Positions 13,310 to 62,914 of a stretch of DNA of 64,000 nt are shown piece after piece; position 1 is the stretch's first letter; each line of letters starts with the position of its first letter. The stretch lies in assembly GCA_002269645.1 (NCBI GenBank), contig NIVC01000019.1, positions 1,178,001-1,242,000 of the forward strand, in the 5' to 3' direction. The notes under the pieces are model-generated. The model worked only from the letters and a program-made list of their open reading frames with translations. It searched no databases and was not told the DNA's origin. The position numbers and the translations under genes are program-made. The stretch is from Macrostomum lignano (Eukaryota).

Positions 13310-13371
13310 CTTCAAACAAAGAGTGGCAATACTAAAAACTATCTGACGTCATCTCAGCCTAGGCATGCCTG

Positions 13372-16941: not shown

Positions 16942-16986
<45 letters not shown>

Positions 16987-19819: not shown

Positions 19820-20212
19820 TAGAGGTCGGATGGGATCCCGATCCCGATCCCAAAATCTCGGGATCCCGAGGAAAATTGAATTCCCGCGGGACCAGTCTCC
19901 CAACCCTAAAAAACTCGAGATTCGGGAACAGGTCTTTTGATTAAAAATTTATAGAATTAGTGATTACTTGAAGGTATTTTGCTTTAACTTGTACTCGTTA
20001 CATTATTTACTTTGTTGGTTACAAAACTTCATATCAATTTTGTTGTGTTTTACTTCTTGATCTTTATAATCTTTTCTCAATTTTGTTTAACTTTATATGG
20101 ACAATACACTAAAAGACCTGATCCCGATTCCCGAATCCCGATCCCGATCCCACGAAAAAAATTATTCCAGATCCCGATCCCGCCCGAAGATTTCAATCCC
20201 GTCCGACCTCTA
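19820..20212. mobile_element. hAT MITE, duplicate of 10300-10692
   Basis: Same TIRs and AAAATCAT TSD. Confidence 0.92.
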
Positions 20213-22590: not shown

Positions 22591-22829
22591 CACAGATTCT
22601 AGAGTAACTAGATGGGCCACTCAGGCATATATACTTAGTAAAACAGCTTTCTACTTTTATTTCAGTAGCAAAGAAGAACAAATAAGCTATTTTATAAAAT
22701 ACAGTTAGCTGAGATGACTTTGATAAGTTAAAAAGCCGTGTCTCTAAAAATGCATTAAAACGCTTCAGTTGAAAGTAGCTTGCACGCAGATGTGCTGAGT
22801 GGCCCATCCAGTTAATTCTAGTATCTGTG
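22591..22829. mobile_element. hAT-like MITE (CACAGA family), about 60 nt downstream of the FDXR stop; duplicate of 13071-13309
   Basis: Same TIRs and CTTCAAAC TSD. Confidence 0.88.
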
Positions 22830-22891
22830 CTTCAAACAAAGAGTGGCAATACTAAAAACTATCTGACGTCATCTCAGCCTAGGCATGCCTG

Positions 22892-36324: not shown

Positions 36325-37823
<1,499 letters not shown>

Positions 37824-41008: not shown

Positions 41009-41403
41009 CCCACAAGGGCCAACCCCCACGAGAGCCAACCCCCCACGAGAGCCAACCCCCCACGAGAGCCAACCCCCTCGAGATCCAACCCCTTTGAGAG
41101 CCAACCCCTTCGGGAGCCAACCCCCCACGAGAGCCATCCCCCTCGAGAGCCAACCCCTTCGAGAGCCAACCCCTTCGGGAGCCAACCCCCCACGAGAGCC
41201 AACCCCCACGAGAGCCAACCCCCACGAGAGCCAACCCCCACGAGAGCCAACCCTACGAGAGCCAACCCCCACGAGAGCCAACCACCCACGAGAGCCAACC
41301 CCCACGAGAGCCAACCCCCACGAGAGCCAACCCCCCCCCACGAGAGCCAACCCCTACGAGAGCCAACCCCTACGAGAGCCAATCTCAGGAGAGCCAACCC
41401 CCA
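41009..41403. repeat. 16-17-bp minisatellite (GAGAGCCAACCCCCAC), about 23 units
   Basis: Tandem units that explain ORFs 40922-41440. Confidence 0.95.
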
Positions 41404-41560
41404 CGGCACAGAGAGTGTACATGGCCTGACAGGATTATGAAGTCACGGCCGCTGTACACCCTGTGTGGGCGTGTGTATGAGTGCGTTCCTGTGTACTGTA
41501 TTGGCGGGCTTGAATTGGTATTGAGACGACGTTGCCGAAGACATTGCACCAGGATGACCA
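41395..41560 (-). mobile_element. SINE copy (5'-truncated), same family as the 38 kb and 49 kb copies
   Basis: Minus strand reads CAATGTCTTCGGCAACGTCG...GCCAATACAGTACACAGG...GTGTACAGCGGCC...CATGTACACTCTCTGTGCCGTGGGGGTTGG. Confidence 0.7.
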
Positions 41561-41747: not shown

Positions 41748-43502
41748 TCAACCGAGAAAAGCTCCTATGGTAGTGAGAATGGCTTTGCCGCAGGCTGGGC
41801 AGGTGCAGAAGCTTCTCGTGCATTGCCGGCAGTATTTCAGATGCGCGCAAGGCAACAAGACGCAGTCGCGGCTTCGCTGACTGCAGTTATTGCACATCGG
41901 GCTGTCGTTGCAATCTGTTGCAGAGGGGCCAGAGCTTCTAGCCGGCTCCTCTGGCCTGTCATCTGAATTTCTGCGTAAGAAAAATCGAGGCCATTGATCC
42001 TATTGTTGTGTTCTGCATTTTTGTTTCAGTTCATACTGACATACTGGTAACTCAGTTAGTTTGTGTGCGTTTTCAACCTCCCATGTGACTTGTCGTTGGG
42101 CTTAAGCCTTAGCCGGTAGTAGTTCAAAACTTAGAAGTTCCGGCAGTAGGTAGTAGTCCCCCCAGTTCTCGTTGTTATCACTATTTTCGTGCCGCTAATT
42201 GGCTGGCGTTAGGCATGCCTTTCGTGTCTGGTGTACTATTTGTTGTTTACTGCGTTCTGATTGGCTGGGACTGGCGGCGGACTCGGTATTTCCTTTCCCT
42301 CCTGGCGGTGTGGTTGGCTGGCGCGGGGTGGGGTCGGTGGTGAGGTGGTGGTTGGAGAGCTTGAGGCTTTCCCCACTCTCCTCACTTAGCCGGAAAGACG
42401 GTCTCTTACTGCGAAGTCTCAATCAAGAAATCAGACCCGCCAGACCTACCGAAGCGTACGGGCCTACGTGTGCCAGATGTCAGCATCTGTTGCCAATTAC
42501 GTGAGTGGTGCTGTTCTTCATTTTTTCGGTTGCCTAGGGGTTCGGAGAGTCCGTGTGTCCTCCGAACTGACGGCCCGACGCCGGCTCACCCAGTAGGCTA
42601 GTAGGGATCCTGGTATACAGCTCTCTATACGACTGTCTGTATCTGTATCTAAATATCGCCCAGCACAGATGCAATATTTGAGTTTGTTGCATAGTGTTAA
42701 AGAATACATAAGGGATACCCAGACCTTGGAAATGGTTTTAACACAAAAAGTAGAAAACGTATTATGTTAGAAATTACCTCAAGCAGTTGATGCGCTCGTT
42801 TTGCGCAGGTGTGGTCACGCACCAGCTGGCAGCCGCCTTTACCAAATCTGCGGTCCAGGCACCCAGTGTGCGCAGAGCATCCGGTATGCCGTGAATCACT
42901 TTGATGAGGTCTCCTGACTTTGGTAATTTCAAGCCACTGCCTGCCGCCTGCTTCAAAATCAGTTTCAACAAGGCCAGGACAACGTCTCCTTCGGAAAAGC
43001 CGTACGACTTCACGTATCCAACGATGGGATCAAACAGAGCTGATAAAAGCTGGCCGATCAGTTTTTCGTGTTTTTTAGCATCAGCAGCAATTTCAGCGTT
43101 GGGCGGCTTCTTGTCAATGAGCTGCAGCAATTGAAGCAGCTCACAGTTGGGCTGGTGAAGCGGTTTCCACTGCTCCAGACGGTCTGTCAGTTTCTCAACT
43201 CGGAAGCCGCAGTGACAGCAACTGGCGCTGCAACTGCCATCGAAATGAAACCCCTGCTCGGCCACCTTTTCTGCTGCAGTTGCTTCTATAATGCCTTTGA
43301 ATGACTCAAGACGGCGATTAAAGATAATCTGATCCGGTCTGTTTGATGTGCCGATTATAACTAGTAGATAACCGGCCAGAACCGAATTCCAAACTCTATT
43401 TTCTGCCCCTTGAATAGACTTTTTAGCCTGTTCGGCTGAGAGTAGCGGGATGGTCAGGGTCTGAATATTGGTTTGGTTGCTAGATTGACTGGCGCGGGCC
43501 AT
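41748..43502 (-). CDS. IAP-like paralog A (atypical BIR, UBA-like, RING); 2 exons, about 315 aa
   Basis: Exon 1 43502-42778 (RLESF...AEQGFHFDG...SCCHC...H...C; VKSYGFS) ends AG|GTAATT. Exon 2 41970-41748 follows TTACGCAG| and encodes CNNC...LPCAHLKYCRQC...CPAC...GAFLG*; it is absent from the ORF track. The phase-2 join is in frame. Confidence 0.8.
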
Positions 43503-45149
43503 TAATCGGTTCTTCAGTTGCCTGCTTGAACTCTGAAGGAACCTGTGAGGGTGCACGTCAAAAAAACACGAAATGAATCGTACGAAGCTTTAAGAAAAGT
43601 GTAACTTATTTGGGTTGTATTGTTGCCCAAAAATTACTGTAGCAGTTTCAATTTTCATGAATTTAATTTCTAGTACTAGGAAAATCCACAGCAAGAAAGT
43701 AGGCTGTGTGAATTTTAAGTCTTTTTGTAGTTAGAAACCATTATTGATCGTTTCGTGTATATTCTGTGATATTCAAAAATGTTAAATAGATTCACGACCT
43801 ACCTTATAGGCCATTTGCAACAGAGAAAAACTCTACATGTCCATGCAGTGGCTGCGCTCCATGAGACTTGCTGCAATTCAAACCGTACTTCTTTACTCTC
43901 TAGAGGCGGTTTTCTTTTGCAAACAAAGAACTTCTATTTAGACTTGTATATAATCAGACAAATCGAAAACTGCCACCCTAAGCTCAGTGCGCGTATACAA
44001 GAGTTGGAAAAGAAAACTTTGCGCAAGTCGCAGTGTAGTGAGCTGAAGTCAATCGCTCTGCCAATGCTCTAACCGGGTAGTTACTAAGGCTCGTACTTGT
44101 GCAGCTTTTAGCATTGAACAAGGAACTAAAAATATGCTATCAATAAAGGGCCACTATGAGCAATAGTGAATATTCTAGCCAGGGAATCTTATTGGTTCGC
44201 TGAGCTACCGCAGCTAGCATGGAATAGAGCATAGAGGCTTCCCTGATTCTAGCCAAGGCATGTACAGACTATAAGCTTCCCAAAGTGCAGCTTTACAGAA
44301 GCTCTACAAAAACTATAATGTGTAGTTGCGAGTCGCAAATTGTGACAATTAATCATTGTTTTTAGGATCCTCAAGCAGCATAACAATGCAAAGAATCAGC
44401 GGTCGCAGCACGGGACAACGAATTGTCCGTTGTCTATGGCAACGAAACTGCTATCCTGGACACGCGACAATACCGTACGAGAGGCGTCATCATCAATTGG
44501 ACAGGCCCTAGTGAAACGTGTAAGCAGTGCCTGTGCGGCGTCAATATCAGCTTCGGCAATTCAGCCTACCTATGATGAAAGCATAAGTTGGAGTTGGAAC
44601 TAGCTCGGATTATTAACTTAGTCCTCGAAAAGCTTTACTTAAATAGGTTTTTATCACAGACACAAACTATCCAAAAGATAAAACGTATTTCAAATATATA
44701 TATAGTATCTTTAATGATAGTTTAATAAATTCTGTTTATTTTGAGTAAGCATGGTTTTTTGGTTAAATTCTGCTAAAATACACCAAAAACGTAGCAATCT
44801 GTTGATAAAAAACTTTTTTCACTCCAAGCATACGAGTAAACGTCAGTGTGTATCTTTTTTTATGCCACGAATGAAAGCTTTAAATCAGAACAAATTTAAC
44901 AAGACAATACTTGCTTTGTTTTAGGCGAATTAATCTCTTTGTTAGGTTAATTTTGTGTCATTGCAAAAACGAAATTTTAATTGACTCATCTATTAAAATC
45001 ATTAATAAGAATCTGTTGCGTGATAGGCAGGTCTCGCCTTAAAACAGCTGATCGAATGTCATGGAACTTGCTGGTTGCCCAGTAGCATTTAATTTCGGCC
45101 TTGCGTACAATTCCCATGTAGAAAATAATGGCATACTATTTTTAACTTT

Positions 45150-45370
45150 GTTTTCTGAGCAGAGTTGGAAGAGTTGCAGCTCTTCACAAGCTCAGGAAAT
45201 AGTGTTTTCCATCAGCTGAGTAATCACGTGCTCAGTGAAGAACTTTGCAAATAAGTCCAGCACCCCAGCGAACGCAACTCAGTTCTCTATTGTTGAAACC
45301 AGGAATTCCATGAAATACGGGGTGAGCCACACATTCTCACCAACGATTTCGTCGACATCTTTTTTCGTTG
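45150..45370 (-). mobile_element. Possible piggyBac-like transposase remnant
   Basis: A stop-interrupted frame contains LDLFAKFFTEHVITQLMENT, resembling the piggyBac/PGBD motif LF.LFFT..II..IV..TN. Short match only. Confidence 0.25.
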
Positions 45371-45874
45371 ACCTCAGCGGCCAAGACTTGACTACTGGAG
45401 TTTGCGACTGGAGTCGCTAAACTATTCGTGAGAGTAAGAAGTAGCTCGTAATTAGCTGTCACTGGCATGAACTGGAAAGAGGGAGAGAAAACAGAGTAAA
45501 CAGGGACTACTCGATCAAACACCCGGACGGGAAACTAGGAATTTTTTACGAGGCTGGTCTTTTTACGAGGCAGCGCCTGCACGGACAGGGTGGGAGGTAC
45601 GACTCAGATAGGCCCACTAGTCGTCAAAAAGTTTTGGCTCGATCTGGCATGGCGTCAAATACAACAACTAACGCTGTTACAGCTGCCTTTAGACAAATTA
45701 AGTGTAAGCAGGGGTTACTGGCTGCAGTTGGTCTGCACTTAGACATGAATACAGAATTACCAGCACACGCTGCCCACATATTCCTTTATAATAAAAATGA
45801 GTTGTCTGCATATGGATAGTCTAGACCTAAAATTCTAGCAGAAGTCTGTTTCAGGCTCTCTGACAGTCGCTAAG

Positions 45875-46076
45875 TCACACTATATAGGCAGGTACATTGC
45901 ACAGTATATAGTGGCCACAAAGTTGACAGTTCTTCATATCGCTGACGCACACCTGACAGAACTTCAGGTGAGCGCACGGTAGCACGATCCGATTGCGTTG
46001 GCGACTGCGGCACCGAACGCACTGCGGGCTGTCGTCGTCTTGAAGCAGTGAATTGGCGTGCGTCACATCTTGCTCA
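45875..46076 (-). CDS. IAP-type RING exon (B); probably the terminal exon of paralog C or an orphan
   Basis: CVRC...LPCAHLKFCQVC...CQLC...PAYIV*. No ATG (the track uses TTG). Candidate phase-2 acceptor GATTGCAG|T at 46077/46076. Confidence 0.7.
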
Positions 46077-46225
46077 CTGCAATCGGGTTTGTTCAAGGGG
46101 AATGTTTGAGAGGGTTGCGTGCAGCAATCACATCACATCGAAGCAGACAGCTTAGACTAATATATTATTAAATTTTCTCAGATAGGAATTTTTAGACACC
46201 CGTGAACTAGCTACTGGCTGGCGCC

Positions 46226-48520
46226 CCTGGTGCTGGCGCCCCTGGTGCTGGCGCCCCTGGTGCTGGCGCCCCTGGTGCTGGCGCCCCTGGTGCTAAAGCC
46301 CCTGGTGCTGGCGCCCCTGGTGCTGGCGCCCCTGGTGCTGGCGCCCCTGGTGCTGGCGCCCCTGGTGCTGGCGCCCCTGGTGCTGGCGCCCCTGGTGCTG
46401 GCGCCCCTGGTGCTGGCGCCCCTGGTGCTGGCGCCCCTGGTGCTGGCGCCCCTGGTGCTGGCGCCCCTGGTGCTGGCGCCCCTGGTGCTGGCGCCCCTGG
46501 TGCTAGCGCCCCTGGTGCTAAAGCCCCTGGTGCTAAAGCCCCTGGTGCTAAAGCCCCTGGTGCTAAAGCCCCTGGTGCTGGCGCCCCTGGTGCTGGCGCC
46601 CCTGGTGCTAAAGCCCCTGGTGCTAAAGCCCCTGGTGCTGGCGCCCCTGGTGCTGGCGCCCCTGGTGCTGGCGCCCCTGGTGCTGGCGCCCCTGGTGCTG
46701 GCGCCCCTGGTGCTGGCGCCCCTGGTGCTGGCGCCCCTGGTGCTGGCGCCCCTGGTGCTGGCGCCCCTGGTGCTGGCGCCCCTGGTGCTAGCGCCCCTGG
46801 TGCTAAAGCCCCTGGTGCTAAAGCCCCTGGTGCTAAAGCCCCTGGTGCTGGCGCCCCTGGTGCTGGCGCCCCTGGTGCTAAAGCCCCTGGTGCTGGCGCC
46901 CCTGGTGCTGGCGCCCCTGGTGCTAAAGCCCCTGGTGCTGGCGCCCCTGGTGCTGGCGCCCCTGGTGCTGGCGCCCCTGGTGCTGGCGCCCCTGGTGCTG
47001 GCGCCCCTGGTGCTGGCGCCCCTGGTGCTGGCGCCCCTGGTGCTGGCGCCCCTGGTGCTGGCGCCCCTGGTGCTGGCGCCCCTGGTGCTGGCGCCCCTGG
47101 TGCTGGCGCCCCTGGTGCTAGCGCCCCTGGTGCTAAAGCCCCTGGTGCTGGCGCCCCTGGTGCTGGCGCCCCTGGTGCTGGCGCCCCTGGTGCTGGCGCC
47201 CCTGGTGCTGGCGCCCCTGGTGCTAAAGCCCCTGGTGCTGGCGCCCCTGGTGCTGGCGCCCCTGGTGCTGGCGCCCCTGGTGCTAAAGCCCCTGGTGCTG
47301 GCGCCCCTGGTGCTGGCGCCCCTGGTGCTGGCGCCCCTGGTGCTGGCGCCCCTGGTGCTGGCGCCCCTGGTGCTGGCGCCCCTGGTGCTGGCGCCCCTGG
47401 TGCTGGCGCCCCTGGTGCTAGCGCCCCTGGTGCTAAAGCCCCTGGTGCTAAAGCCCCTGGTGCTGGCGCCCCTGGTGCTGGCGCCCCTGGTGCTAAAGCC
47501 CCTGGTGCTGGCGCCCCTGGTGCTAAAGCCCCTGGTGCTAAAGCCCCTGGTGCTGGCGCCCCTGGTGCTAAAGCCCCTGGTGCTGGCGCCCCTGGTGCTA
47601 AAGCCCCTGGTGCTAAAGCCCCTGGTGCTGGCGCCCCTGGTGCTGGCGCCCCTGGTGCTGGCGCCCCTGGTGCTGGCGCCCCTGGTGCTGGCGCCCCTGG
47701 TGCTAAAGCCCCTGGTGCTGGCGCCCCTGGTGCTGGCGCCCCTGGTGCTGGCGCCCCTGGTGCTGGCGCCCCTGGTGCTGGCGCCCCTGGTGCTGGCGCC
47801 CCTGGTGCTGGCGCCCCTGGTGCTGGCGCCCCTGGTGCTGGCGCCCCTGGTGCTGGCGCCCCTGGTGCTAGCGCCCCTGGTGCTGGCGCCCCTGGTGCTG
47901 GCGCCCCTGGTGCTGGCGCCCCTGGTGCTGGCGCCCCTGGTGCTGGCGCCCCTGGTGCTGGCGCCCCTGGTGCTGGCGCCCCTGGTGCTAGCGCCCCTGG
48001 TGCTAAAGCCCCTGGTGCTAAAGCCCCTGGTGCTGGCGCCCCTGGTGCTGGCGCCCCTGGTGCTGGCGCCCCTGGTGCTGGCGCCCCTGGTGCTGGCGCC
48101 CCTGGTGCTGGCGCCCCTGGTGCTGGCGCCCCTGGTGCTGGCGCCCCTGGTGCTAAAGCCCCTGGTGCTAAAGCCCCTGGTGCTGGCGCCCCTGGTGCTG
48201 GCGCCCCTGGTGCTGGCGCCCCTGGTGCTGGCGCCCCTGGTGCTAAAGCCCCTGGTGCTAAAGCCCCTGGTGCTAAAGCCCCTGGTGCTGGCGCCCCTGG
48301 TGCTAAAGCCCCTGGTGCTAAAGCCCCTGGTGCTAAAGCCCCTGGTGCTAAAGCCCCTGATGCTAAAGCCCCTGGTGCTGGCGCCCCTGGTGCTGGCGCC
48401 CCTGGTGCTAAAGCCCCTGGTGCTAAAGCCCCTGGTGCTAAAGCCCCTGGTGCTAAAGCCCCTGGTGCTAAAGCCCCTGGTGCTAAAGCCCCTGGTGCTA
48501 AAGCCCCTGGTGCAAAGGCG
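46226..48520. repeat. 15-bp tandem array, 153 units (CCTGGTGCT[GGC/AAA/AGC]GCC)
   Basis: Perfect 15-bp phase from 46226 to 48520 (2295 bp). Variation is almost entirely at one 3-bp slot. Confidence 0.98.
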
Positions 48521-48944
48521 CTCTGAAGATTGGCCCAGTCATCTAATATCTAATATTTGGAAAGCTCGGTTTAAATCTGATAGCGGACTCATATAATGCG
48601 GACAAAAATCTGTACATGTTGGTTAAATGCAAACTCAAAAGTATAGAGCAATAACACACGTAACTCGTAGTTACGGGGCGACTTTAACAGTTGAACCGCA
48701 GCAGAGCAGCAAAAGCAGCATCTGTCGAACTTTGAAGCCACCGATTTTACTAAAATCCTATAGAGAGGCGGTAGCATCAGCGATGTTGTCTAATCAGAAA
48801 GCATCCGATTGGCACGAGTACGCTGGATCAATTGCGAGTTTTACTGTTACCATGTTTTTGCAGCTTAGTAACTAAAAACGATGACATAAATGAAATCGAT
48901 ATTCATACAAACAAACAACATTTAGCTTTTTTAGTTAGAGGCAA

Positions 48945-49170
48945 GGGGCCTGTGCGCATCCAGGTGCACTTTAAGCAACATTGTCGCACAACCGGCGAGA
49001 GGCATTACTGCCCCTTCCGCCGACTCCCCTGAGCAGGCGCACTTGAGCACGCGGATACGTACGCAGTCATACGCACAGGCACACACTCACCCAGGAGTGT
49101 ACAGCGGCCCTGCCTTTATTTATCGTTAGGCATGTACACTTCACTGTGCCTTGGGGTTTGGATTCCAATT
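48945..49170 (+). mobile_element. SINE copy, same family
   Basis: CAACATTGTCGCACAA, GACTCCCCTGAGCAGG, GTGTACAGCGGCC and GCATGTACACTTCACTGTGCCTTGGGG match the other copies. Confidence 0.65.
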
Positions 49171-50542
49171 TAGCCCCAAATTATTAATGTGACTGGTTGT
49201 TATTGTTCCCCCCCCAAACAATGTTAATGTTAATCTTTAACTCAGATGGCAAAATTGTAAAAAATAATTCCAGTGTGTTGGCACGCAGTTGGTGACTTGC
49301 ACTTTCGACTGAACTGTTGAATTTATTGACGGTCTGCATGGTGATTCTTCATGGTGATGGAGATGTCTTCAAATCTAATCAGGGTACGAGGCAAAAATCC
49401 GATATGCATGCTTGTGTATACAGAATTTCTTCTACCTGAACAAAAAAGAGTATGCAGTATGAATATCGTTTCAGTTTTATTCGTTGATCAGATTGAAGCT
49501 TTACTTCGGGCTCCATTCCGTAGCTTAAGTTGGCGTCCCGCGAGCAGTTAGTTTAGTTCTGAATGTTGAAAAACACACAGTCTGAGAGTCTCTGAGGTTC
49601 TATGGCCAAGGTTGTCGTTCTAATCAATTTGATCCTGCGAGCAGTCAATTTCATGCAAACTTTTTAAAATCTATGCAGATCAGTCATCATGCATCCCAGG
49701 GTCCAACAAGACAAGGCAACGCAATGCGGAACAACACAACAGAATAGAAACCATCGTGGTATAGTCAGTTTCGAAAGTTATCAAGCTCAGAGAATCGGTA
49801 GGCCAGTGATACAGCGGTGAAGCTGTAGCCCATCATTTCACGATGCCATCCTCCGCGTTTTCGTTTTTAGCGGATACTTGTTCAGCATGGGTGAAGGCAA
49901 ATCGCGAGCGTTGTCAGCGGACCGATTCTTCGGAAATTCACAAACGCTTCCCCATGCTAGTTATACATCTGCTCACGCGTACTCTTTGGGGAAGAGACGA
50001 TATTTCAACAGCATCCAGATCAACCTCACTGGTCTCCGGTAGGTCAGGAAGATTGATTAAATTAATTTTATTAAATATGAATCATGAAATTTGTTATTCT
50101 GCATAGATTCTCTTCACGTGAAGAAGAATGTTTAATTTGTCCAGGACACTTCCTAATTCATATTTAATAAAATAAAGCAAAAAAAAGCTTAAAATAAAGC
50201 AGTTTACTGGTAGTTTGTGAGGAATAAACAAATTTAATGCTTGTTCCTACGATTCGTACGACAGAAACTAAAGTGTCTGTAGAAGTGTCTGAATAAGTGT
50301 CGGCGAATGTTTAATACGTCCCGGTAAATCGGGTGGGAACATGATTGGAACGAAACGACAGATCTGGCCATAGAACCCTAGGTGCCTCTGTGAATCCGTG
50401 TGGGCTTTTACCTTTCAGACGAAATCCACTGCTCGCAGGACCGAATTGAGTGGGTGTGGTATATTGCAGCAAAGAACAAAGCACAAGCAAAAAGCAGAGT
50501 TAAAGCATGAATTCGATCGAGCAAACAAATACAGAATCTTAC

Positions 50543-51402
50543 GGCATTGTGGCTCGAAAATCGATATTCGACACATGGTTTCCGTTGTTAATACGAGCAG
50601 CAACCACTTGCTCTGGTACTCGATCGGTGGTTCCCAGACAGCTCGAAAGATCCCGTTGCAGCAGGTCTCTGAATGAGCCTCTACCAGCCAATGCTTCTCT
50701 CAAGAATGACACCAGCTCAGGCGACATAGAGTGCAAGATCTGAATTAAGTCCCCAGGTCTCAGGTCTGAGCTTCTATCTGCTGGACAGAAGACGTAGTTA
50801 TTTATTGCCAGTGTCACGCCAGCCTGCGGGAAGCCGTACGATTCAACCTGGCCAACCAGTTGTCCGTTCAAAAGCAGCTCAAAGAGTTTTCGCAGTTTAG
50901 TCAAAAGCTTTTCAACTCGGGAAGCGATTTCAGCCGCCATCACGGATAGTTCAACATTGAGAAGTCGGATCAGTTGATGCAGACTGCACTCTGGCTGCTG
51001 GTTCGCGTGGCACTCAGCGGGCTCGCAAGCAGTCAGTTTGTCCGCGTGAGCTCCGCAGTGGCAGCAGCTGGCGCCTCCAAGACTGTCGCTGGTAAACCCA
51101 TGCCTCGCCCAACGCTCCGCAGTTTCAACATCAACAAGGCCGTTTCCAGAGAATGAGCGCAGGCGGTTTTCATAGCTAAGATTGGCGGGGCTGACGGATG
51201 CAGCTAAAATAATCAATAAGCTACCCAGAAAATAAACTCGCAGCCTCGGATTCGCATCCGGTGCCAATTGCACCTTTTGCTCACTTGGATTTGTCTTTTC
51301 TCTTTGTTCCGATTGGGGAATTATCTTTGGCAGCACAGTATTTACCAAAATGTTGTTGTCTTCGTTGGCCGTCGATGCTCCGTTGTGGTTGTAGTTGGAC
51401 AT
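50543..51402 (-). CDS. IAP-like paralog C, exon 1 (atypical BIR and UBA-like); RING exon not adjacent
   Basis: ATG 51402. RLRSF...WARHGF...SCCHC-x15-H-x6-C; VESYGF. Ends ATG CC|GTAAGA, a phase-2 donor like paralogs A and E. Confidence 0.75.
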
Positions 51403-53128
51403 TTTGGCCGCCTGCAAAAATATAAAATAGTAATGCAAAAAAACCAATTCTGGCTAAAATTCTAATTTATTTCTGAAAACTGAAATATCCGTTACGAACT
51501 TGTTTGTTCGATGCGAACACGCTCGCTGAGTTTTTAGGAAATCAGCGGATACTGTCGGACCTCCCAGCACATAAATCTGAATCCTATAGCTGACTGGTCT
51601 GGCTTCAATCAAACTATTGTTTACATGTGTCTAATGACGAATTCACAATCAATCAATCAATTTGTGCACTAGAACGTACCAATAAAACACATTAGAATCC
51701 GTAAGGGTAAGAAGCCTGTTTGTTTCTGGCAAGAGTTGAGCAATGCGCGAGAGCCGATGTGTTGTAGATGTTTTTAGTCTCGTACGGCTAAAGAGGTTTA
51801 TCTTTGTCTTCATTGTACACGGAGCCTTCACAATATTTAAAACTTTAATAGAGTACAGCGATGTGCAAAGCCCATAAAAATAATGCGCGAGCGTAGCTTG
51901 ATGAAATGCTTATACACAAGCTGTTTAAAAATTTTGACAACATGGATACGAGAGCAGATGTCAGTTACTTCAGTACAAGAACAGCCGGTAGCCCGCAGGC
52001 GTATGCTATGCTTGTATTGTAATTATATTCAGCAACATTGACAAGCTCAAATTTTCTGTGGATCCGTGATTTTTAATCCACTACAGGCGTTGAGATTATT
52101 GTAGAGTACTTTTGCACCTGTGGTAGTTAGCTACTGCGTAATAAACTAAAGTTGTTCTACGCGAAAGGCATCGCATTTCTCTTTTTATGCAATATGGTGA
52201 AATTATATGCGATTAATGATTCAAAAAATAGTTTTCAAGTATATATTTACTTCACCAATTTTTTTATTACACCTGCCCTAATGGGTAGATAGATGTGCAA
52301 CCGACAGCTCAGCCGCAGCTATTACGCGGATCTTCTGAAGACTGCTCACGGCTGTTCAGTCCAAGGACTGGGGGGGGGGGGTCGCCACACACATCCTCAA
52401 TTACCCCAGCTGTACTGAAGCAATGCAGAGTTAAATTCTTGCTCAAGAACACAAATTCACCTCATACTCGTACATATCAAAACAATATGACACTTACCTT
52501 TGCGATAAATTCCTCACTATGATTCCTGATGTTCACTCAGATTGGCATAACGGTGCGTACGGTGGTATGCTGGCTTTCTGCTGTTAACTAGGAACCAACC
52601 TTATACGCACACAAATGTTAGAATTTATACCGTACACACCAGGGTGTACGTTCACAAGTGTACGTGTCTGCCTGTATGCGCATGCAAGTACACTGGTACT
52701 GGCATTCAGGAGCAGCTAGTACTGGGTATCCCAGCTAATGTACGATGCCAGTGCACGAGACACTTTCCTTCTCATTTCAGACAATATACATACTAGGTAC
52801 TACTCTGATATTTAGCTTTAAGTTAGCTACTACATCTATCGTTTAACTCTTCTAAAGAGGTCAAGATAGACCTCACTTTTGGAGGATAATTTGTTGGAAA
52901 AAATAATTTTAACAAACTTCATAATAATTTAAGTGGGGCTACGTGGACAGGTGATATTTATAAACAGTTCATATTTATTTATCCATATTGAAATCTGTAC
53001 ATGACATTTGTACATGAAGTAGCTGTGAAATATTGGCTAAAATTAACTGCTGTTGTGTCGATGTGAAAGTATGCGGTATATACTCGGACAATGTACAAAT
53101 CAAGAATTAGGGAACGAATTCATTTTAT

Positions 53129-54139
53129 TCACAATGCCAAAACCGCAGTCACAATGCTCAGGATCTCAATCCCACAGCGGGGACATGAGCTCAGGAGATT
53201 GAGACATTCGCGGCAGGCGACGAGGTGAGTGCAGGGAAGGCAGACCCGGTCGCGAGGTCGCTCGTGGCACTCGATGCACCGCCAGTTCGTTCCCGAGTCT
53301 TCGGCCTCCGTCTGCCTCCGTCCCACAGAAGCAGTTTTCTCACCCGACTGATTCTCTGGCGGCTGGCAGACTTCATCGCCTTCGGTCTCCAAGGCCACGG
53401 GTGTTGAGTCCGTTGAAAGTCGGAGCCGGTCTTGAACGATGGGTGACGCTAGGAGCAGGTCTAGCACGTCAGGAAGCTGGTCTAAGTCAGTCCGCAGCTC
53501 GTGGATCAAGCCAATGATTTCGCCCGGCTGCTTAGCGCCAGAAGCTTCAGCACCACCAGCCAACAGTAGCTGAAGCTGGACAAAGATGACTTCATTGGCC
53601 GAAAATCCAAAAGACTCCACGAATTTAGTTACAGGATCTCTGAGTGCAGCTAAGAGTCTTCTGATGAGCTGCTTCAGCCGCTCTGCATCGGCGATGTACT
53701 TAACGTCGTCTACTTCGGGTCTTGCCTTGTTGAGAAACTGCCAAAGGCGTAGCATAGCGCAGTGAGGTCGTCGGTTCGAGTGCCAGTCTCCAGGATCGCC
53801 ATTCACCAACGAGTCAACACGCGCACCGCATAGAATGCAGCTGACACCGCCGAGTCCGTCGCTGTAGAATCCGCCATCCGCCCATTGGTGAGCAGCGGCT
53901 TCGTCCAGGAAACCTTCGAAGGAGCGCAGTCGACTTGTGAAGCTGAGCTTGTCCTGGTAGGGTAAAGATGATCCTAGAATGACCAGGAGACTGCCGACCA
54001 GAAAGTTTCGAATCGTCTCGGAGCCAGACTTCCAGCGCTCCTTCAGTTCTGTCAGCAGAGAGTCCGAGAACAGACAAGAGCTTACTCGAAGCTCATTGAC
54101 GTCTTTCGGAACCTGTAGCTTTTGAATACCTGTACTCAT
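53129..54139 (-). CDS. IAP-like paralog D (atypical BIR, UBA-like, RING), intact intronless CDS, 336 aa
   Basis: RLRSF...WADGGFYSDG...C-x2-C-x15-H-x6-C; FVESFGFS; terminal CIEC...LPCTHLVACREC...CPRC. Confidence 0.85.
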   Translation of the reverse strand: MSTGIQKLQVPKDVNELRVSSCLFSDSLLTELKERWKSGSETIRNFLVGSLLVILGSSLPYQDKLSFTSRLRSFEGFLDEAAAHQWADGGFYSDGLGGVSCILCGARVDSLVNGDPGDWHSNRRPHCAMLRLWQFLNKARPEVDDVKYIADAERLKQLIRRLLAALRDPVTKFVESFGFSANEVIFVQLQLLLAGGAEASGAKQPGEIIGLIHELRTDLDQLPDVLDLLLASPIVQDRLRLSTDSTPVALETEGDEVCQPPENQSGEKTASVGRRQTEAEDSGTNWRCIECHERPRDRVCLPCTHLVACRECLNLLSSCPRCGIEILSIVTAVLAL

Positions 54140-55013
54140 TATGTTACCTTGAAATAATATTTAAAGATTTAACCCTCCCGTTTATTATTACCCTTGCATC
54201 TCATTAGTATTCGAAATTGCCTGCAATTCCAAGGGCTAGCCAAGTTTGTTCCTCGGAAACGCCAAGGAAATGCCTTTAATGTCTTTAATAACTGCCTGAA
54301 GTTCCACTTTATAAGCGCACTAATGGGTTAAGTGCTTTGCTTATGAACTGTACAGTACATGAACTTGCTATGCAAATATTTGACAGTTTCCTGAACAACA
54401 AGAATCTGTACATTTCTATTCTCATACACTAAAGCAGTTATATCGATTGGAATTGTACACTACCTATTTCAGGTGTATACGTTACAACCCTAATTAGCTT
54501 TCGTAGATTAGAAGATTTATACAGATTTTTGTTCCTTGTAATAAGACACGAACCTTTAAAAATAGTGCTTACGAGCTGTCGTTTTTGTTTTGCCTTCAAA
54601 GCGTAGAGCGAGTGTACAACCTACACGGTACTATCCACTGTGTGCATGGGCGCCTCTGTACATTTTGCATTGTACGCTTTTAACTGTCATGGCGACAACG
54701 CTCTTGCAATTTTGGCAGTAACTATTCACTATAGAATCAAGCAGTGAGCTAGAAAGTGTACTCAAGCTGAATAGTAAAATGATACTATTTAGAGCATCAT
54801 CATATCGCTGCAGTATCCTCGATGTCTCAGAGAATGATTGTTATAAGTACATGTTCAGCAGTTAGATTACACAAATGTGTCAGGAATTATGTTCTATTTT
54901 GCTTATTTATCCCTCTTTTGCCCCGGGCGATAGTTTATGTCACGCATGTTTTTATTTATTTCTATCGGTGAAAAATCTATAACAAATCGAGCAACAAAAT
55001 GGCACTCTCAGTC

Positions 55014-56840
55014 TCAGGGCATATACGCTTGTTTCTCAGCCGTAATCTTGCAGTTGCAAGCGGGACACACTCGAAATCCTGAAATGCAACGCTTGCAGTA
55101 CAAGAGATGCTTGCACGGCAGCAGCAGCACTTCCCGAGACCTGGTCTGGCAAAGATGGCACAGCGGGCTGTCTTCCAATGCCTTCTGGTTGGCAGTGGTC
55201 TCTTGATGGCCTTCTGGTGCCCTGTAATAGTTGTGTAATAATGTAGGATTACACAACTAATCATGTAGGAAAATGTAGGAAAATGTAATAATGTAGGAAA
55301 ATAATCATTTTATTTATAGCAAAGATAACTACCTATTAAAAAACTATCTAGGGGAATCTTTCTCCTTCGAAATCAATCAATTTTTTAACGAGGACAACAT
55401 CTACAACAACAGTAGAAGCAGCAACAAAAAAAGCAAAAACAACAAAAAACAACACCCCCAGATTCTTACTCACAGAATCTCACGATTCTTATCCCCAAAG
55501 TCTCACGATTCTTACCCACATAATCTCACGATTTTTACCCCCAGAGTCTCACGATTCTTACCCCCAGAGTCTCACGATTCTTACCCACATAATCTTACGA
55601 TTCTTACCCACATAATCTCTCGATTCTTACCCCCAGAGTATCACGATTCTTACCCCAGAATCTCATGATTATTACCCCAGAATCTCATGATTATTACCCC
55701 AGAGTCTCACGATTCTTACCCACATAATCTCACGATTCTTACCCCCCCCCCAAAGTCTCACGATTCTTACCCCCAAAGTCTCACGATTCTTACCCCCAAA
55801 GTCTCACGATTCTTACCCCCAAAGTCTCACGATTCTTACCCCAGAATCTCATGATTATTACCCCCCTGAATCTCACGATTCTTACCCCCAGAATCTCACG
55901 ATTCTTACCCCAGAATCTCACGATTCTTACCCTCAGAATCTCACGATTGTTACCCACAGAATCTCACGATTCTTACCCTCAGAATCTCACAATTCTTACC
56001 CCATCCCAGAATCTCACGATTCTTACGAGCGTACCCCCAGAAAAAAAAGTCGCCCAGTGATTAAAATTCGCTGGGGTGGGGGGCAACACTGGCTGTTAAT
56101 TATGCGAAAGTTATGCGAAATTCGCAAAAGTCTAACCTGATCGAGTGGCTTTCATCGGCTGAAATCTCCTGATTTCTGATGGTACCCGGTCGGTTCATGA
56201 TGTCGGAATTCCTCGGGTCATCAGTGACTTTTTGACTGGCAAAATCCAGCAGCCTCTGCACCATGCTAGCCAGCTCTGCTGCAATGTACTCCGGAAGCGA
56301 GTGCTCAGCCTCTATCAGATCTCCCGGTTTCCACGCCAGAGCTCCGCGATTCAGCTTGAAGAAGAGGCGCAAGGCGCCCAACGCGGTCTTGGCTTTCGAA
56401 AACCCGAACGATTCAACGAAACCAATTTTGGAGTCCCTTAGAAAGAGGAACAGCTTCATGATTAGCTTATGAAACTTGGCAGTTTCAGCGGCTAGCTCAG
56501 AGTCAGGAATCGATCCCGGCTTTTCAGAGAGTCGACGGAGCTGCTACAGGGCGCAGTCAGGCCGGTGATTCGCGCTCGATTCTCCGCAGTGGCAGCAGGC
56601 GCTGTCGACTCCATTGCTGTAGAAACCGTCCTGAGCCAATTGACGAGTCATTTCTTCATCGTGACGGTTGTCCAGGAATGATTTGAGACGATCCTTGAAG
56701 CTGAGCCGGTTTAAGCTCACTGCTGTTCCAAAAATAACCAACAACGTGCCAATTAGATGAATTTCCCGTCCTGATTGCAACGCTTCCGGAGGGCAGATAG
56801 ACAATATGTACTGTATAATTTGGTTTATGCTGACGTCCAT
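55014..56840 (-). pseudogene. IAP-like paralog E; 2 exons (56840-56137, 55221-55014) with an in-frame TAG at 56544-56546 and a shortened BIR
   Basis: ORFs 56544-56840 and 56100-56459 share one frame across the TAG. Donor AG|GTTAGA at 56137, acceptor ATTACAG|G at 55221, RING CHLC...LPCKHLLYCKRC...CPAC...QAYMP*. Confidence 0.75.
55455..56030. repeat. 22-23-bp minisatellite (CCCCAGAATCTCACGATTCTTA) filling the paralog E intron
   Basis: About 25 degenerate units. Confidence 0.92.
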
Positions 56841-57375
56841 TGTACTTCTGAACAGTGACTACGCCAAGTCCCATGAAGGCTCGCTTTATGCAGTGAACCG
56901 AACATGGAACCGAAAATCTCTTATCAACACGCATAATGCAGTGAACTCTACAATCTAGTATACAATGTATGCAATAGGTTTTAACAAAATAATTTCGCTC
57001 AGCCAATGAGATGCCGCTCTATTGCCTGGCTGTTGAAAGCAATATAACAAAATTGTATCTCGCTAATGCGTGTTTTAAATGACTTGTGTACTGTGTAAGA
57101 AACGCAGCTCTCTATGAAATATACTATTGAGATACAATGACTCTAATATACGAGCGTAATATATCGATGCCTTGTGATAGGGCATCTATCAGCAGTCTAT
57201 TGAGCCTTAGAAATGAGAGCAGCGTCGCATGGTGGGCGCAACTCAAGGCTTGTTGCATAGACCGAACAAGGACGACTTAACTGTTATGTTAATATGACTA
57301 AAACTCGTCGAAAAGGAATTATCAAAATATACATATCTAATTACAAAACTGCCTATCAGCAGCGCACGCTAGGAG

Positions 57376-58467
57376 TCAGCAAATTGTCGCTCTGATGACA
57401 GTCAGAATGTCAGCTCGGCATTTCGGGCAGCTCCGGACCTCAGCGGTCAGGCAGCGGCTGCAGAAGCAAAAGTGAGCACACGGCAGGATCACTCGGTCCC
57501 GGTTGCGCGTGAAGCACCGCTGGCAGAGCGGACTGTCGCTGCTGCTGAGGTCCGGCTGGCTGAATGACGACAGTTCTGAGACTCGACGACCCGAAGCTGG
57601 AGAAGTCTCAGCTGATTGGGCGGTCGGCTGTCGATCTTCAACTTGCTCGTCCTTCGTCGAGGTGTTCGCATCGATGAACTTCAGCCAGCGACTGGAGGCT
57701 GCGCTGCCAGTGGTAGCATTGGCTTGCTTCACGAGCTGGATCAGCTCACCAGACCTCAGTTCGGCACCAGCTGTAGCCCGGAAAACATGAGCCGCAGCAG
57801 CCAAGGTTAAATCGAACTTTGAGAATCCGAACGATTCGGCGAGTAGCACAGACTGATTGTTGATGGCGTCCTCGACTTGTCTGAACAGCGCTTCAAATCT
57901 GTGTGAATCAGCGACCACGACGGATAATCGCTTGTCGAGAAGTTGCAGTAGCCGCAGGAGCTGGCAGTTGGGACTCTGGTTGATGTGCCACCGCTCGGGG
58001 TCATCCACGATCAGCCGGTCAGCAGGGACTCTGCACTGGCAGTAGCAGCAGCTGGCGCCGTCACGGCCGTTACTGTAGAATCCAGACTGCGCCCACCGGC
58101 GAGCCACCGCGCTGTCGAGGATATTCAAGAATGACTGCAGTCGGGTGTTGAAGTCGAGCTGGAGTCGGTTGGCAGCCACGGCGTGAATGACGAGCAAGCG
58201 GCCGACCAGAGCAGCGTTCACAGAGTCGCTGTTTTGCTGCAGAAGCTGCGTAGCGCAGTTCCGATACCAGGGACACAGGAGCATCAGCTCCCTGACTTGA
58301 AGCAGCAGTCGCCATGCAGAGCTCGCGGCTTGCCTTTGACAACAGATTGTCGGCTCCGAGGCCCAGTCGTGCCATTGATGAGGCCCGTCGCCGTGCTCCA
58401 GCGGCCGACTTGTCAGATCGTTTGGCTGGGACTGAGAGTTGGACCCCGTGAACTGCGCTTGAGCCAT
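57376..58467 (-). CDS. IAP-like paralog F (atypical BIR, UBA-like, RING), intact intronless CDS, 363 aa
   Basis: RLQSF...WAQSGFYSNG...C-x2-C-x17-H-x6-C; LAESFGFS; terminal CQRC...LPCAHFCFCSRC...CPKC. Confidence 0.85.
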   Translation of the reverse strand: MAQAQFTGSNSQSQPNDLTSRPLEHGDGPHQWHDWASEPTICCQRQAASSAWRLLLQVRELMLLCPWYRNCATQLLQQNSDSVNAALVGRLLVIHAVAANRLQLDFNTRLQSFLNILDSAVARRWAQSGFYSNGRDGASCCYCQCRVPADRLIVDDPERWHINQSPNCQLLRLLQLLDKRLSVVVADSHRFEALFRQVEDAINNQSVLLAESFGFSKFDLTLAAAAHVFRATAGAELRSGELIQLVKQANATTGSAASSRWLKFIDANTSTKDEQVEDRQPTAQSAETSPASGRRVSELSSFSQPDLSSSDSPLCQRCFTRNRDRVILPCAHFCFCSRCLTAEVRSCPKCRADILTVIRATIC

Positions 58468-61436: not shown

Positions 61437-62822
61437 CTAACCTGCAGATATTGGACACAACTTTGTTATTGGTCTCGTCATTGTGCGATCACCGACTTTG
61501 ATTGAGGCGACTCTCACGTGACCGTCAGGACCGCGCATGACCTCCAGCACGCGAGCCAGCGGCCAGTGACCCCGAGGCGAGTCGGGGCTCACCAGCAGCG
61601 CCACGTCTCCAGGTTGTAGGTCACGCAGCTCGCGGCGCCACTTGCTCCGCGGTGCGAGTCCCGGCAGCCACTCGCGCAACCACCGGCGCCAGATCTGCGA
61701 CACCAGCTGCTGGACGTGACGCCATCTTCTTGAAGGACTGTGGGCGATGGCAGCGTCGACCTTCGGTGCAAACTTCCCGCCGACTTGCCCGATGAGGAAG
61801 TGATTCGGCGTCAGCGGCACATCATCACTCGGATGCGCCGTCTGGTACGTCAACGGCCTTGAATTCAGAAGTGCCTCCGCTCCAGCAAACGCGCTTAGCA
61901 GCTCCTCATCCGTGACGTCCGCCTCCTTCAGTATTGCCCAGATTGCCTTCTTCGCTGCTTTGATCATGATTTCGTGCACCCCACCGAAGTGCGGCGCAGC
62001 GGGCGGGTTGAAATGCCATCGCAACTGCTGAGAAGCCGTTCGCTGTTGAAGCTTCTGGGTATCCAAGACGTCGACTAGTTCTCGAAGCTCGCGCGCCGCA
62101 CCGACGAAGTTCGTGCCGTTGTCCGAGAACAGCTCGATCGGTTGGCCTCGTCGACTGATCATCCGCTGTAGAGTCCGTAGGAAGGAATCGGTATCCATGC
62201 CGAATGCCACTTCCAGATGTACAGCTCGCGTTGCCAAGCAGGTGAACAATGCCAGGTACCTTTTCTGCCGAGCCTTGCCACGGCCCTGCTTGGTGATGAA
62301 TGGACCGGCAAAATCGACAGCGACCCGAGCGAAGGCACGAAGCGGCTCCTTGAATCGGCAAGCGGGCAAGGGGGCCATAATCTGGCTGGCTGGTCTGGCT
62401 TTCCGTCGGCGACATTCGGCGCACTTTGCTTCCCAAGACTTAATGGCTTCTCTGGCCGAGACGATCCAAAATCGGTTTGACAGTGCCACCAGAGTTTGGT
62501 TTGTGCCTAGATGTGGGACACTTTCGTGGCGATGCTTCACGATGAGCTCCGTCACGCGGTGTGATCGTGGCAGAATGATAGGAAATCGAGTGCTAAACGG
62601 TAGCACATCGGCGAACTTTAGTCTCCCATCAGCGCGAAGCAGGTCGTTGACGTCGAGCTTCGGGTTCAAGTTAGAAATCGCACTGCGTCCCGGCAACTGC
62701 TTTCCTGCTCGCAGACAAGCGATCTCTTCCGCAAACGTTTCTTGCTGGGCTCTCTGGATGATCTTCGATTCAGCTGCTTCAATCTCTGCTGGTGATAGCT
62801 CGCCTGCTCTAAAAAGAGGTCT
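61437..62822 (-). CDS. BEL/Pao integrase region (HHCC, DDE core, C-terminal domain), open frame
   Basis: ORF 61437-62696 extends upstream in frame through GELSPAEIEAAE to the inversion junction. Confidence 0.85.
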   Translation of the reverse strand, partial: RPLFRAGELSPAEIEAAESKIIQRAQQETFAEEIACLRAGKQLPGRSAISNLNPKLDVNDLLRADGRLKFADVLPFSTRFPIILPRSHRVTELIVKHRHESVPHLGTNQTLVALSNRFWIVSAREAIKSWEAKCAECRRRKARPASQIMAPLPACRFKEPLRAFARVAVDFAGPFITKQGRGKARQKRYLALFTCLATRAVHLEVAFGMDTDSFLRTLQRMISRRGQPIELFSDNGTNFVGAARELRELVDVLDTQKLQQRTASQQLRWHFNPPAAPHFGGVHEIMIKAAKKAIWAILKEADVTDEELLSAFAGAEALLNSRPLTYQTAHPSDDVPLTPNHFLIGQVGGKFAPKVDAAIAHSPSRRWRHVQQLVSQIWRRWLREWLPGLAPRSKWRRELRDLQPGDVALLVSPDSPRGHWPLARVLEVMRGPDGHVRVASIKVGDRTMTRPITKLCPISAG

Positions 62823-62914
62823 GCTGACAAAGCTAGCGAGTGTCTTTGATCCACTTGGATTGATCTCCCCGTTTGTCGTGCAGGCGAAGATTCTGATGCA
62901 GGAGCTTTGGCAGT

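What the first reader, a model, noticed from the sequence alone, without database searches (positions are those of the whole stretch)
41748..58467. Tandem array of highly divergent BIR-UBA-RING (IAP-like) genes: a lineage-specific ubiquitin-ligase/cell-death family
Seen: at least five co-oriented paralogs (A 41748-43502, C 50543-51402 with RING exon B, D, E, F) share RLxSF...(W/L/V)AxxGF...CxxC...H...C, then a helical segment with (V/A)(E/K)S(F/Y)GF, a low-complexity linker and a terminal C3HC4 RING. Sequences are strongly diverged, and intact, broken and split members are mixed. Established: BIR+UBA+RING is the architecture of the XIAP/cIAP C-terminal half, and the IAP UBA has an (M)GF loop. 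Inference: a birth-and-death expanded family of single-BIR E3 ligases, possibly in innate immunity, stress or regeneration-linked apoptosis control. This is the best candidate in the window for an undescribed system.
Basis: partly seen in the sequence, partly recalled or inferred. Interest (0 to 1): 0.8.

Follow-up and report, generated by a model that had tools for sequence, protein, structure and literature searches.

The report
Cryptic IAP-like ubiquitin ligase gene cluster
Five neighbouring genes in this flatworm (Macrostomum lignano) sequence encode very divergent relatives of the "inhibitor of apoptosis" ubiquitin ligases. Standard domain searches barely recognise them, and flatworms were recently reported to have lost this protein type.

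Summary
Window 41748-58467 carries exactly five co-oriented minus-strand paralogs (28-35% identical), each with a conserved helix, a BIR-like zinc module, a UBA-like three-helix module, a disordered linker and a C-terminal C3HC4 RING.

A, C and E are ordinary two-exon genes with a shared phase-2 GT-AG intron before the RING exon. Orphan RING "B" is exon 2 of C, across a 4.5 kb intron holding a satellite. D and F lack that intron. Only E is damaged, by an in-frame TAG.

The organism is Macrostomum lignano. A second copy of the cluster (88-95% DNA identity) keeps F, E, D and C exon 1 open, and pooled pN/pS is 0.43. GenBank models of E and of the F copy derive from RNA-seq.

BIR and RING homology to IAPs is solid. 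UBA homology appears only by profile-profile comparison and predicted topology. The peptide-groove tryptophans of XIAP BIR3 are absent, and D and F lack the RING-tail aromatic.

At least six further family groups, all M. lignano "hypothetical proteins", show only a RING in Pfam.

Verdict: an undescribed, fast-evolving, apparently lineage-restricted IAP-like E3 ligase family. It is a new variant of a known kind, and its function is untested.

The parts
41748..41970 (-). Gene A exon 2: end of linker plus C3HC4 RING, tail ...GAFLG, includes the stop codon
   Evidence: The acceptor TTACGCAG|A restores the frame (phase 2). phmmer against D gives 1.8e-10.
41971..42777 (-). Gene A intron (807 bp, GT...AG, phase 2)
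   Evidence: Donor TTGAG|GTAATT.
42778..43502 (-). Gene A exon 1 from the first ATG. It holds the conserved helix, a BIR-like module (43116-43331) and a UBA-like module (42891-43031). Lys replaces the canonical zinc His, and another His lies 4 residues before the last Cys.
   Evidence: Pfam BIR scores 15.9 bits. P0002 is the same exon with a predicted upstream extension, so the true 5' end may lie further upstream.
45875..46076 (-).
   Evidence: The acceptor GATTGCAG|T is in phase with the donor of C exon 1. PF13920 scores 33.2 bits.
46077..50542 (-). Gene C intron (4466 bp). It contains a 15-bp satellite at 46217-48513 (153 copies).
   Evidence: The same arrangement is present in the second cluster copy L004.
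50543..51402 (-). Gene C exon 1: conserved helix, BIR-like module (50959-51183), UBA-like module (50731-50865)
   Evidence: Donor CC|GTAAGA.
53129..54139 (-). Gene D, a single ORF of 336 aa. It holds the helix (53966-54013), BIR (53732-53950), UBA-like module (53495-53638) and RING (53171-53281). The tail ...AVLAL lacks the aromatic residue.
   Evidence: dN/dS against the L004 copy is 0.36.
55014..55221 (-). Gene E exon 2: RING, tail ...QAYMP
   Evidence: Acceptor ATTACAG|G. P0003/PAA93983.1 is spliced exactly here. PF13920 scores 39.4 bits.
55222..56136 (-). Gene E intron (915 bp), with a 23-bp tandem repeat at 55461-56026
56137..56840 (-). Gene E exon 1. Its short BIR variant (56547-56708) is 14 residues shorter and has no His at the canonical spacing. 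An in-frame TAG lies at 56544-56546. The UBA-like module is at 56301-56435.
   Evidence: The second cluster copy has TCG (Ser) at that codon and an open frame (P0153, L004 11528-12346).
57376..58467 (-). Gene F, a single ORF of 363 aa. It holds the helix (58171-58221), BIR (57937-58161), UBA-like module (57724-57858) and RING (57415-57528). The tail ...RATIC lacks the aromatic residue.
   Evidence: P0001/PAA51594.1 is a 91% identical copy. dN/dS is 0.56.

Best explanation
This is a tandem cluster of five old paralogs of a Macrostomum lignano gene family. The family descends from RING-type inhibitor-of-apoptosis proteins (the BIR3-UBA-RING half of XIAP/cIAP, or BIRC8-like) and has diverged almost beyond sequence recognition.

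Shown here:
- The gene structures, and colinear BIR, UBA-like and RING modules.
- Intact zinc ligands in the RING of all five genes, and in the BIR of C, D and F.
- A second cluster copy with open frames.
- Fewer non-synonymous than synonymous changes between the two copies.
- Transcript-derived GenBank models for E and for the F copy.

Inferred mechanism:
- The C-terminal RING recruits a ubiquitin-charged E2. It probably acts as a dimer, as in IAPs, where the C-terminal tail aromatic contacts the donor ubiquitin.
- A, C and E keep that aromatic (F/Y at position -3). D and F do not, so they may be weak ligases or depend on a heterodimer partner.
- The S(F/Y)G(F/Y) three-helix module binds ubiquitin chains.
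- The BIR-like module, packed with a conserved N-terminal helix, selects the substrate or partner. It lacks the two groove tryptophans that hold IBM peptides in XIAP BIR3, so its ligand is probably not a classical caspase or Smac-type N-terminus.
- The paralogs would then be E3 ligases with diversified recognition. The process they act on (cell death, signalling, defence, germline) is unknown.
For: - Paralogy and gene models.
- Organism and family members.
- BIR.
- RING.
- UBA. Helices 205-211, 217-230 and 239 onward of the F model match the alpha1-loop-alpha2-loop-alpha3 order of a UBA.
- Compact high-confidence module: pLDDT 80-96 over residues 70-250 of F.
- Constraint: the L004 copy has the same gene order. 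dN/dS is 0.33-0.56 per gene, pooled pN/pS is 0.43, and the binomial P is 6e-8.
- Expression: GenBank Mlig_3_7 gene models come from a genome-guided RNA-seq transcriptome (PMC5730564). PAA93983.1 (E) and PAA51594.1 (F copy) are such models.
- Role of the tail aromatic in dimeric IAP-type RINGs: established knowledge (BIRC7 and RNF4 structures), recalled from memory and not tested here.
Against: - No biochemical or expression data were examined for A, C or D of this window. D and F have no exact-sequence record in the gene collection.
- The UBA assignment rests on one profile-profile comparison and a predicted model. HMM-to-sequence searches of Pfam and the PDB fail.
- In A and E the canonical zinc His is missing, so their BIR may fold differently or not bind zinc.
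- dN/dS of 0.33-0.56 is high for a housekeeping function and is compatible with partly relaxed constraint.
- The structure model used only 14 sequences.
Confidence: 0.7

Rival explanations
1. They are classical IAPs. The BIR would bind IBM-type N-termini of caspases or Smac/Reaper-like antagonists and directly restrain apoptosis.
For: Foldseek's nearest folds are type II BIR3 domains of XIAP, cIAP1 and ILP2 and baculoviral IAP-3. The architecture equals the XIAP/cIAP C-terminal half.
Against: In the alignment to an XIAP-like BIR3, the positions of W310 and W323 (XIAP numbering) carry non-aromatic, variable residues. The loop between CxxC and His varies in length, and it is deleted in E and in P0007/P0012-type members.
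Confidence: 0.12
2. The BIR-like stretch is a convergent zinc-knuckle-like motif. On this view the genes are a lineage-specific RING E3 family with a novel N-terminal domain, unrelated to IAPs.
For: Pfam BIR is at or below the gathering score in the window genes. It is absent from P0006, P0007, P0011, P0161, P0128 and P0153. No protein outside M. lignano resembles them closely.
Against: All 49 PDB hits of the BIR profile are BIR domains. Three modules are colinear with IAPs, and each matches its IAP counterpart best. RING-only relatives such as MGRN1 and CGRRF1 score lower than XIAP and cIAP.
Confidence: 0.08
3. The array is a graveyard of decaying duplicates without present function.
For: E carries a nonsense codon and a shortened BIR. 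A lacks the canonical zinc His. D and F lack the tail aromatic. dN/dS is moderately high.
Against: A, C, D and F keep ORFs of 315-363 codons despite 28-35% identity. Splice sites are intact. The second cluster copy keeps F', E', D' and C' exon 1 open. Synonymous changes are in excess (P 6e-8). Transcript-based models exist.
Confidence: 0.05

Closest known systems
XIAP / cIAP1 / cIAP2 (BIRC4/2/3), C-terminal BIR3-UBA-(CARD)-RING half
   Same: The module order is the same. The RING is the PF13920 type at the extreme C-terminus, with a hydrophobic or aromatic tail. A G-F loop sits in a three-helix module between BIR and RING. The best Foldseek hit is 3t6p, followed by BIR3 domains.
   Different: There is only one BIR and no CARD. 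The family has its own conserved N-terminal helix (LxGxLLVI). The groove tryptophans are absent. SFGF replaces MGF, followed by a conserved PGDLI motif. Sequence identity is about 20-25% in the BIR.
BIRC8 (ILP-2) and BIRC7 (ML-IAP/livin): single-BIR RING IAPs
   Same: Both have a single BIR plus a C-terminal RING, and ILP-2 BIR structures are among the top fold matches. That BIRC8 also has a UBA is from my own knowledge.
   Different: The human genes arose by recent loss of BIRs within vertebrates (PMC13159474), so they are not orthologs. Their BIRs are canonical type II domains.
Lineage-specific IAP expansions in bivalves, gastropods and aphids
   Same: Tandem or lineage-specific duplication of BIR-RING genes with gain and loss of domains (PMC13159474, PMC7831173, PMC8917759).
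   Different: Those expansions keep BIRs that Pfam/InterPro recognises, which is how they were counted. Here most members show only the RING in Pfam. The phylum was reported to lack RING-IAPs, from a data set whose main text never mentions Macrostomum.
Baculoviral IAP-3 type proteins
   Same: BIR plus C-terminal RING. They are the top matches in the viral structure library, at E 4e-6.
   Different: They are viral, usually have two BIRs and no UBA-like module. Nothing indicates horizontal transfer.

Membership tests
IAP / BIR-containing proteins (BIRC) | A BIR domain recognised by PF00653 at its gathering score (22.9 bits) | tested here: inconclusive
   F scores 23.0 and passes. D scores 21.8, E 18.5 and A 15.9, all below the cut-off, and C gets no hit. 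Wider family members show none, or 14.5 bits at most.
IAP / BIR-containing proteins (BIRC) | BIR homology and fold at profile and structure level | tested here: met
   The profile of the five BIR regions hits 49 PDB sequences, all BIR domains (NAIP 4.3e-7, DIAP1 BIR1 5e-5, XIAP BIR3 2e-4). The AF2 model has pLDDT 90-96 in this region. Foldseek gives TM 0.6-0.77, normalised by the target, to XIAP/cIAP1/ILP2 BIR3.
IAP / BIR-containing proteins (BIRC) | Zinc ligands Cx2C-x16-H-x6-C | tested here: inconclusive
   C, D and F have Cx2C-x15/15/17-H-x6-C. A has Lys at the His position, with another His 4 residues before the last Cys. E, its intact twin P0153 and P0007 have a shortened loop ending in H-x3-C. 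Zinc binding itself was not tested.
Type II BIR (IBM-binding, caspase/Smac-binding IAPs) | Peptide groove with conserved Trp310 and Trp323 (XIAP BIR3 numbering) | tested here: not met
   In the family BIR HMM aligned to the XIAP-like BIR3 of P0010, both positions carry non-aromatic, variable residues. In the five window genes the first is Leu.
RING-type IAPs | C3HC4 RING of PF13920 type at the extreme C-terminus | tested here: met
   Scores are 33-39 bits against a cut-off of 27 for D, F, B and the E RING. All eight ligands are present in all five genes. The best PDB matches are XIAP, cIAP1 and cIAP2 RINGs.
RING-type IAPs | C-terminal tail with an aromatic residue three from the end (needed for E2~Ub activation in dimeric IAP RINGs; established knowledge) | tested here: inconclusive
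   It is present in A (AFLG), C (AYIV) and E (AYMP), and in P0006, P0007, P0011, P0012, P0161, P0128 and P0046. It is absent in D (AVLAL) and in F (ATIC) with its copy P0001.
RING-type IAPs with UBA (XIAP/cIAP/BIRC8-like) | UBA three-helix domain with an MGF/MGY loop between BIR and RING | tested here: met
   The match exists only at the remote-homology level. hhalign of 11 family segments against 21 canonical IAP UBA segments gives probability 87.5%, P 3.6e-6 and 46 columns, with SFGF on MGF. Controls score 13.3 or less against 29.2. Sub-threshold hits of the family HMM in ordinary IAPs fall on their MGF loop. The model predicts three helices in the right order. Negative results: Pfam and PDB HMM-sequence searches find no UBA. 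Ubiquitin binding was not tested.
RING-type IAPs | Orthology to a described IAP clade (subgroups of PMC13159474) | not tested
   No phylogeny was built because the BIR is too divergent and too short for a reliable tree with the data at hand. The nearest non-family hits are generic IAPs from a mollusc, a sponge, insects and mammals.
IAP (functional sense) | Inhibition of caspases or apoptosis | not testable with these tools
   This needs RNAi, TUNEL or biochemical assays.

The most novel reading that the evidence does not exclude
RING-type IAPs were not lost at the base of Platyhelminthes. Macrostomum would keep and expand a fast-evolving 'hidden' lineage whose BIR has been retargeted from IBM peptides to another ligand class. 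The tandem paralogs would form homo- or heterodimeric E3s (tail-competent A/C/E with tail-deficient D/F). These would tune cell survival or defence in a regenerating, stem-cell-rich animal.
Probability: 0.3. Interest if true: 0.6.

Novelty: new variant of a known kind. Interest (0 to 1): 0.45.

Why it matters
A 2026 survey of 2,843 IAPs from 312 species concluded that RING-containing IAPs were lost in Platyhelminthes (PMC13159474). Its main text never mentions Macrostomum, and its protostome set was limited to species with a RefSeq annotation.

The family described here suggests that at least the early-branching free-living Macrostomum retains a divergent, expanded BIR-UBA-RING lineage. Domain-based censuses would miss it, because Pfam reports only the RING in most members.

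This is another case of 'hidden orthologs' in fast-evolving flatworms. It also gives the M. lignano model, which supports RNAi and transgenesis, a concrete set of candidate regulators of cell death or ubiquitin signalling.

The family also offers natural variants that could be informative for IAP biochemistry: a BIR without the peptide-groove tryptophans, short-loop BIRs, and RING tails with and without the aromatic residue.

Tried and rejected
- The search for homologous proteins (word-indexed) returned nothing for D. It found only P0011 and P0012 for the BIR+UBA profile and nothing for the UBA-like profile. It was therefore useless as a census tool.
- The exhaustive search of representative proteins lists only the top 150. 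Family members outside M. lignano scoring below about 68 bits could be hidden among the 5,530 hits.
- PDB HMM searches with the middle module found no UBA, with either 5 or 11 sequences.
- Exact-sequence look-ups of D and F found no record.
- The first AF2 run, with the 9 window pieces, was poor (mean pLDDT 58). Only the 14-sequence run was used.
- The domain-level fold of the UBA alone could not be searched.
- dN/dS between paralogs was not attempted, because synonymous sites are saturated at 28-35% protein identity. I used the 88-95% identical second cluster copy instead.
- I considered whether the conserved hydrophobic stretch LxGxLLVI is a transmembrane anchor and rejected the idea. It is only about 14 residues long, it contains Arg or His in F, P0011 and P0006, and the model packs it as a helix inside the high-confidence BIR module.
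- I considered whether the intron before the RING is ancestral to the whole family. It is not supported, because P0011 has introns at other positions and none there, and P0012 is a single exon.
- A literature search for the Mlig gene identifiers found nothing.

Full report
**What is there**

The window is animal genomic DNA with retroelements and satellites. Searching its six-frame translation with the two long ORFs D (53129-54139) and F (57376-58467) recovers nine pieces. All are on the minus strand, all lie between 41751 and 58476, and none lies elsewhere. E-values to A and C are 1e-26 to 1e-38.

Reading the DNA at the ends of the pieces shows that A, C and E are two-exon genes, not broken ones. 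Each main ORF ends at a consensus donor, and each RING ORF is preceded by a polypyrimidine-AG acceptor:
- A: donor TTGAG|GTAATT, acceptor TTACGCAG|A.
- C: donor CC|GTAAGA, acceptor GATTGCAG|T.
- E: donor ATCAG|GTTAGA, acceptor ATTACAG|G.

All three introns are phase 2 and restore the RING frame. Its 4.47 kb intron holds a 15-bp satellite of 153 copies. D and F have no intron at that position.

A database protein, P0003 (PAA93983.1), is spliced exactly at the E junction I predicted.

E is the only damaged gene. An in-frame TAG at 56544-56546 follows the last BIR cysteine (PDCAL*QLRRL).

**Organism and relatives**

A profile of the nine pieces was searched against 1.84 billion representative proteins. 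It gave three near-identical hits and then a steep drop to generic IAPs. Cluster look-ups name the source as Macrostomum lignano.

Six further representatives share the full pattern: P0006, P0007, P0011, P0012, P0045/P0161 and P0128. The pattern is helix, BIR-like module, xS(F/Y)G(F/Y), PGDLI, linker, and a RING ending in A(F/Y)(I/L)x. All six are M. lignano 'hypothetical' or 'RING-type domain-containing' proteins.

An HMM of the middle module separates these members cleanly from all other top-150 hits, at 61-80 bits against less than 10 bits. P0011 and P0012 are solitary genes with different intron positions.

Pfam sees only the RING in these wider members.

**Domain assignments**

*RING.* PF13920 scores 33-39 bits. 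All eight ligands are present. The best PDB matches are XIAP and cIAP RINGs.

*BIR.* Pfam is marginal: F 23.0 against a cut-off of 22.9, D 21.8, E 18.5, A 15.9, and no hit for C. However, a profile of the five BIR regions hits 49 PDB sequences, all of them BIR domains.

With a 14-sequence family alignment, AlphaFold2 gives F a mean pLDDT of 71, with 80-96 over residues 70-250. Foldseek then ranks cIAP1 BIR3-UBA-CARD-RING (3t6p) first, followed by BIR3 domains of XIAP, cIAP1 and ILP2 at TM 0.6-0.77 normalised by the target. The viral library returns only IAPs among its named top hits.

*UBA.* HMM-to-sequence searches fail. Profile-profile comparison with 21 canonical IAP UBA segments gives probability 87.5% and P 3.6e-6 over 46 columns, with SFGF on MGF. 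A reversed template and 30 column-shuffled templates score 13.3 or less against 29.2.

The weak sub-threshold hits of the family HMM in ordinary IAPs nearly all fall on their MGF loop. The model has three helices in the expected order.

I accept the UBA as a remote homolog. It is the least secure of the three modules.

**Departures from canonical IAPs**

- Aligned to an XIAP-like BIR3, the two groove tryptophans (W310 and W323) are replaced by variable non-aromatic residues. The first is Leu in the window genes.
- The loop between CxxC and His varies in length: 15-17 residues in C, D and F.
- A has Lys at the His position.
- E, its intact twin P0153 and P0007 lack about 14 loop residues.
- A conserved helix (LxGxLLVI) precedes the BIR and is modelled as part of the same compact unit.
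- The aromatic residue three from the C-terminus is kept in A, C, E and the wider family. It is Val in D and Thr in F. Its importance in dimeric IAP RINGs is established knowledge that I did not test.

**Are the genes alive?**

A second copy of the cluster lies on contig NIVC01003394.1 (locus L004). It has F', E', D' and C' in the same order, at 88-95% DNA identity. F', E' and D' have open frames there, as does exon 1 of C' (its RING exon lies beyond the end of the locus). E' has TCG (Ser) where the window has TAG.

Nei-Gojobori dN/dS between the two copies:

| Gene | dN/dS |
|---|---|
| F | 0.56 |
| D | 0.36 |
| C exon 1 | 0.33 |
| E exon 1 | 0.39 |

Pooled pN/pS is 0.43, with a synonymous excess at P 6e-8. 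This indicates constrained but fast-evolving genes.

The GenBank annotation of this assembly was derived from a genome-guided RNA-seq transcriptome (PMC5730564). PAA93983.1 (E) and PAA51594.1 (the F copy) are therefore transcript-supported. I found no such record for A, C or D of the window.

**Mechanism**

The most likely reading is a family of IAP-like RING E3 ligases:
- The RING engages the E2.
- The UBA-like module binds ubiquitin.
- The atypical BIR, together with the N-terminal helix, recognises partners other than classical IBM peptides.

D and F may be attenuated or may depend on a partner, because they lack the tail aromatic. All of this is inference from homology.

**Comparison with the literature**

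IAP expansions by tandem duplication are well documented in molluscs and aphids. The same 2026 survey states that RING-containing IAPs were lost in Platyhelminthes. Its main text never mentions Macrostomum, and its protostome analysis was limited to species with a RefSeq annotation.

I found no paper describing this family or its gene identifiers.

**Verdict**

It is a new, cryptic variant of a known protein kind, not a new system. Its biological role remains open.

Noticed in passing
window 4362-13882 and 13880-23402: A 9.52 kb head-to-tail direct duplication at 99.96% identity. It duplicates an ORF that I read as the C-terminal part of an adrenodoxin-reductase-like protein (13372-14037 and 22892-23668). 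That name comes from reading the sequence only, and Pfam gave no hit. The duplication is either very recent or an assembly artefact.
   Followed up: partly
window 46217-48513: A satellite of 153 copies of a 15-bp unit (GCTGGCGCCCCTGGT, GC about 0.73) lies inside the intron of gene C. It reads as a spurious 788-aa 'PLVLA' ORF on the plus strand. The second cluster copy L004 also carries it.
   Followed up: partly
window 25716-28652 (+): A 978-aa ORF with GC of about 0.65 in an otherwise 35-45% GC region. It looks like a non-LTR retrotransposon ORF2 (endonuclease plus reverse transcriptase). It sits between ORFs at 24492-24953 and 29365-29706 that I read as further adrenodoxin-reductase-like exons. 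Named from reading the sequence only.
   Followed up: no
window 2656-4596 (+) and 61437-64000 (-): Retroelement pol-like ORFs (RNase H/integrase-like, and reverse transcriptase/integrase-like) flank the region. Named from reading the sequence only.
   Followed up: no
window 37440-37823 (+): An exon encoding a PQ-loop repeat protein (PF04193, 54 bits), an unrelated neighbour upstream of the array.
   Followed up: partly
window 55461-56026 and 41009-41405: A 23-bp tandem repeat (24 copies) fills much of the E intron. A 16-bp repeat (24 copies) lies just beyond the 3' end of gene A.
   Followed up: no
P0151, P0002, P0152, P0156, P0159, P0162 (database models of window genes and relatives): Public gene models are unreliable here. 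P0151 fuses F to the UBA-RING part of E. UniRef names for family members (MYND-type, RPAP3_C, CULLIN_2, Rav1p_C and LCIB_C_CA domain-containing) do not fit the sequences. The F-E fusion model also raises the possibility that neighbouring genes are co-transcribed, since precursor mRNAs encoding several proteins are reported for this species (PMC5730564).
   Followed up: partly
window 56547-56708 (E); P0153, P0007, P0012: A 'short BIR' variant lacks about 14 loop residues and has altered His spacing. It recurs in otherwise intact family members, so it is a natural subtype and not damage specific to E.
   Followed up: partly
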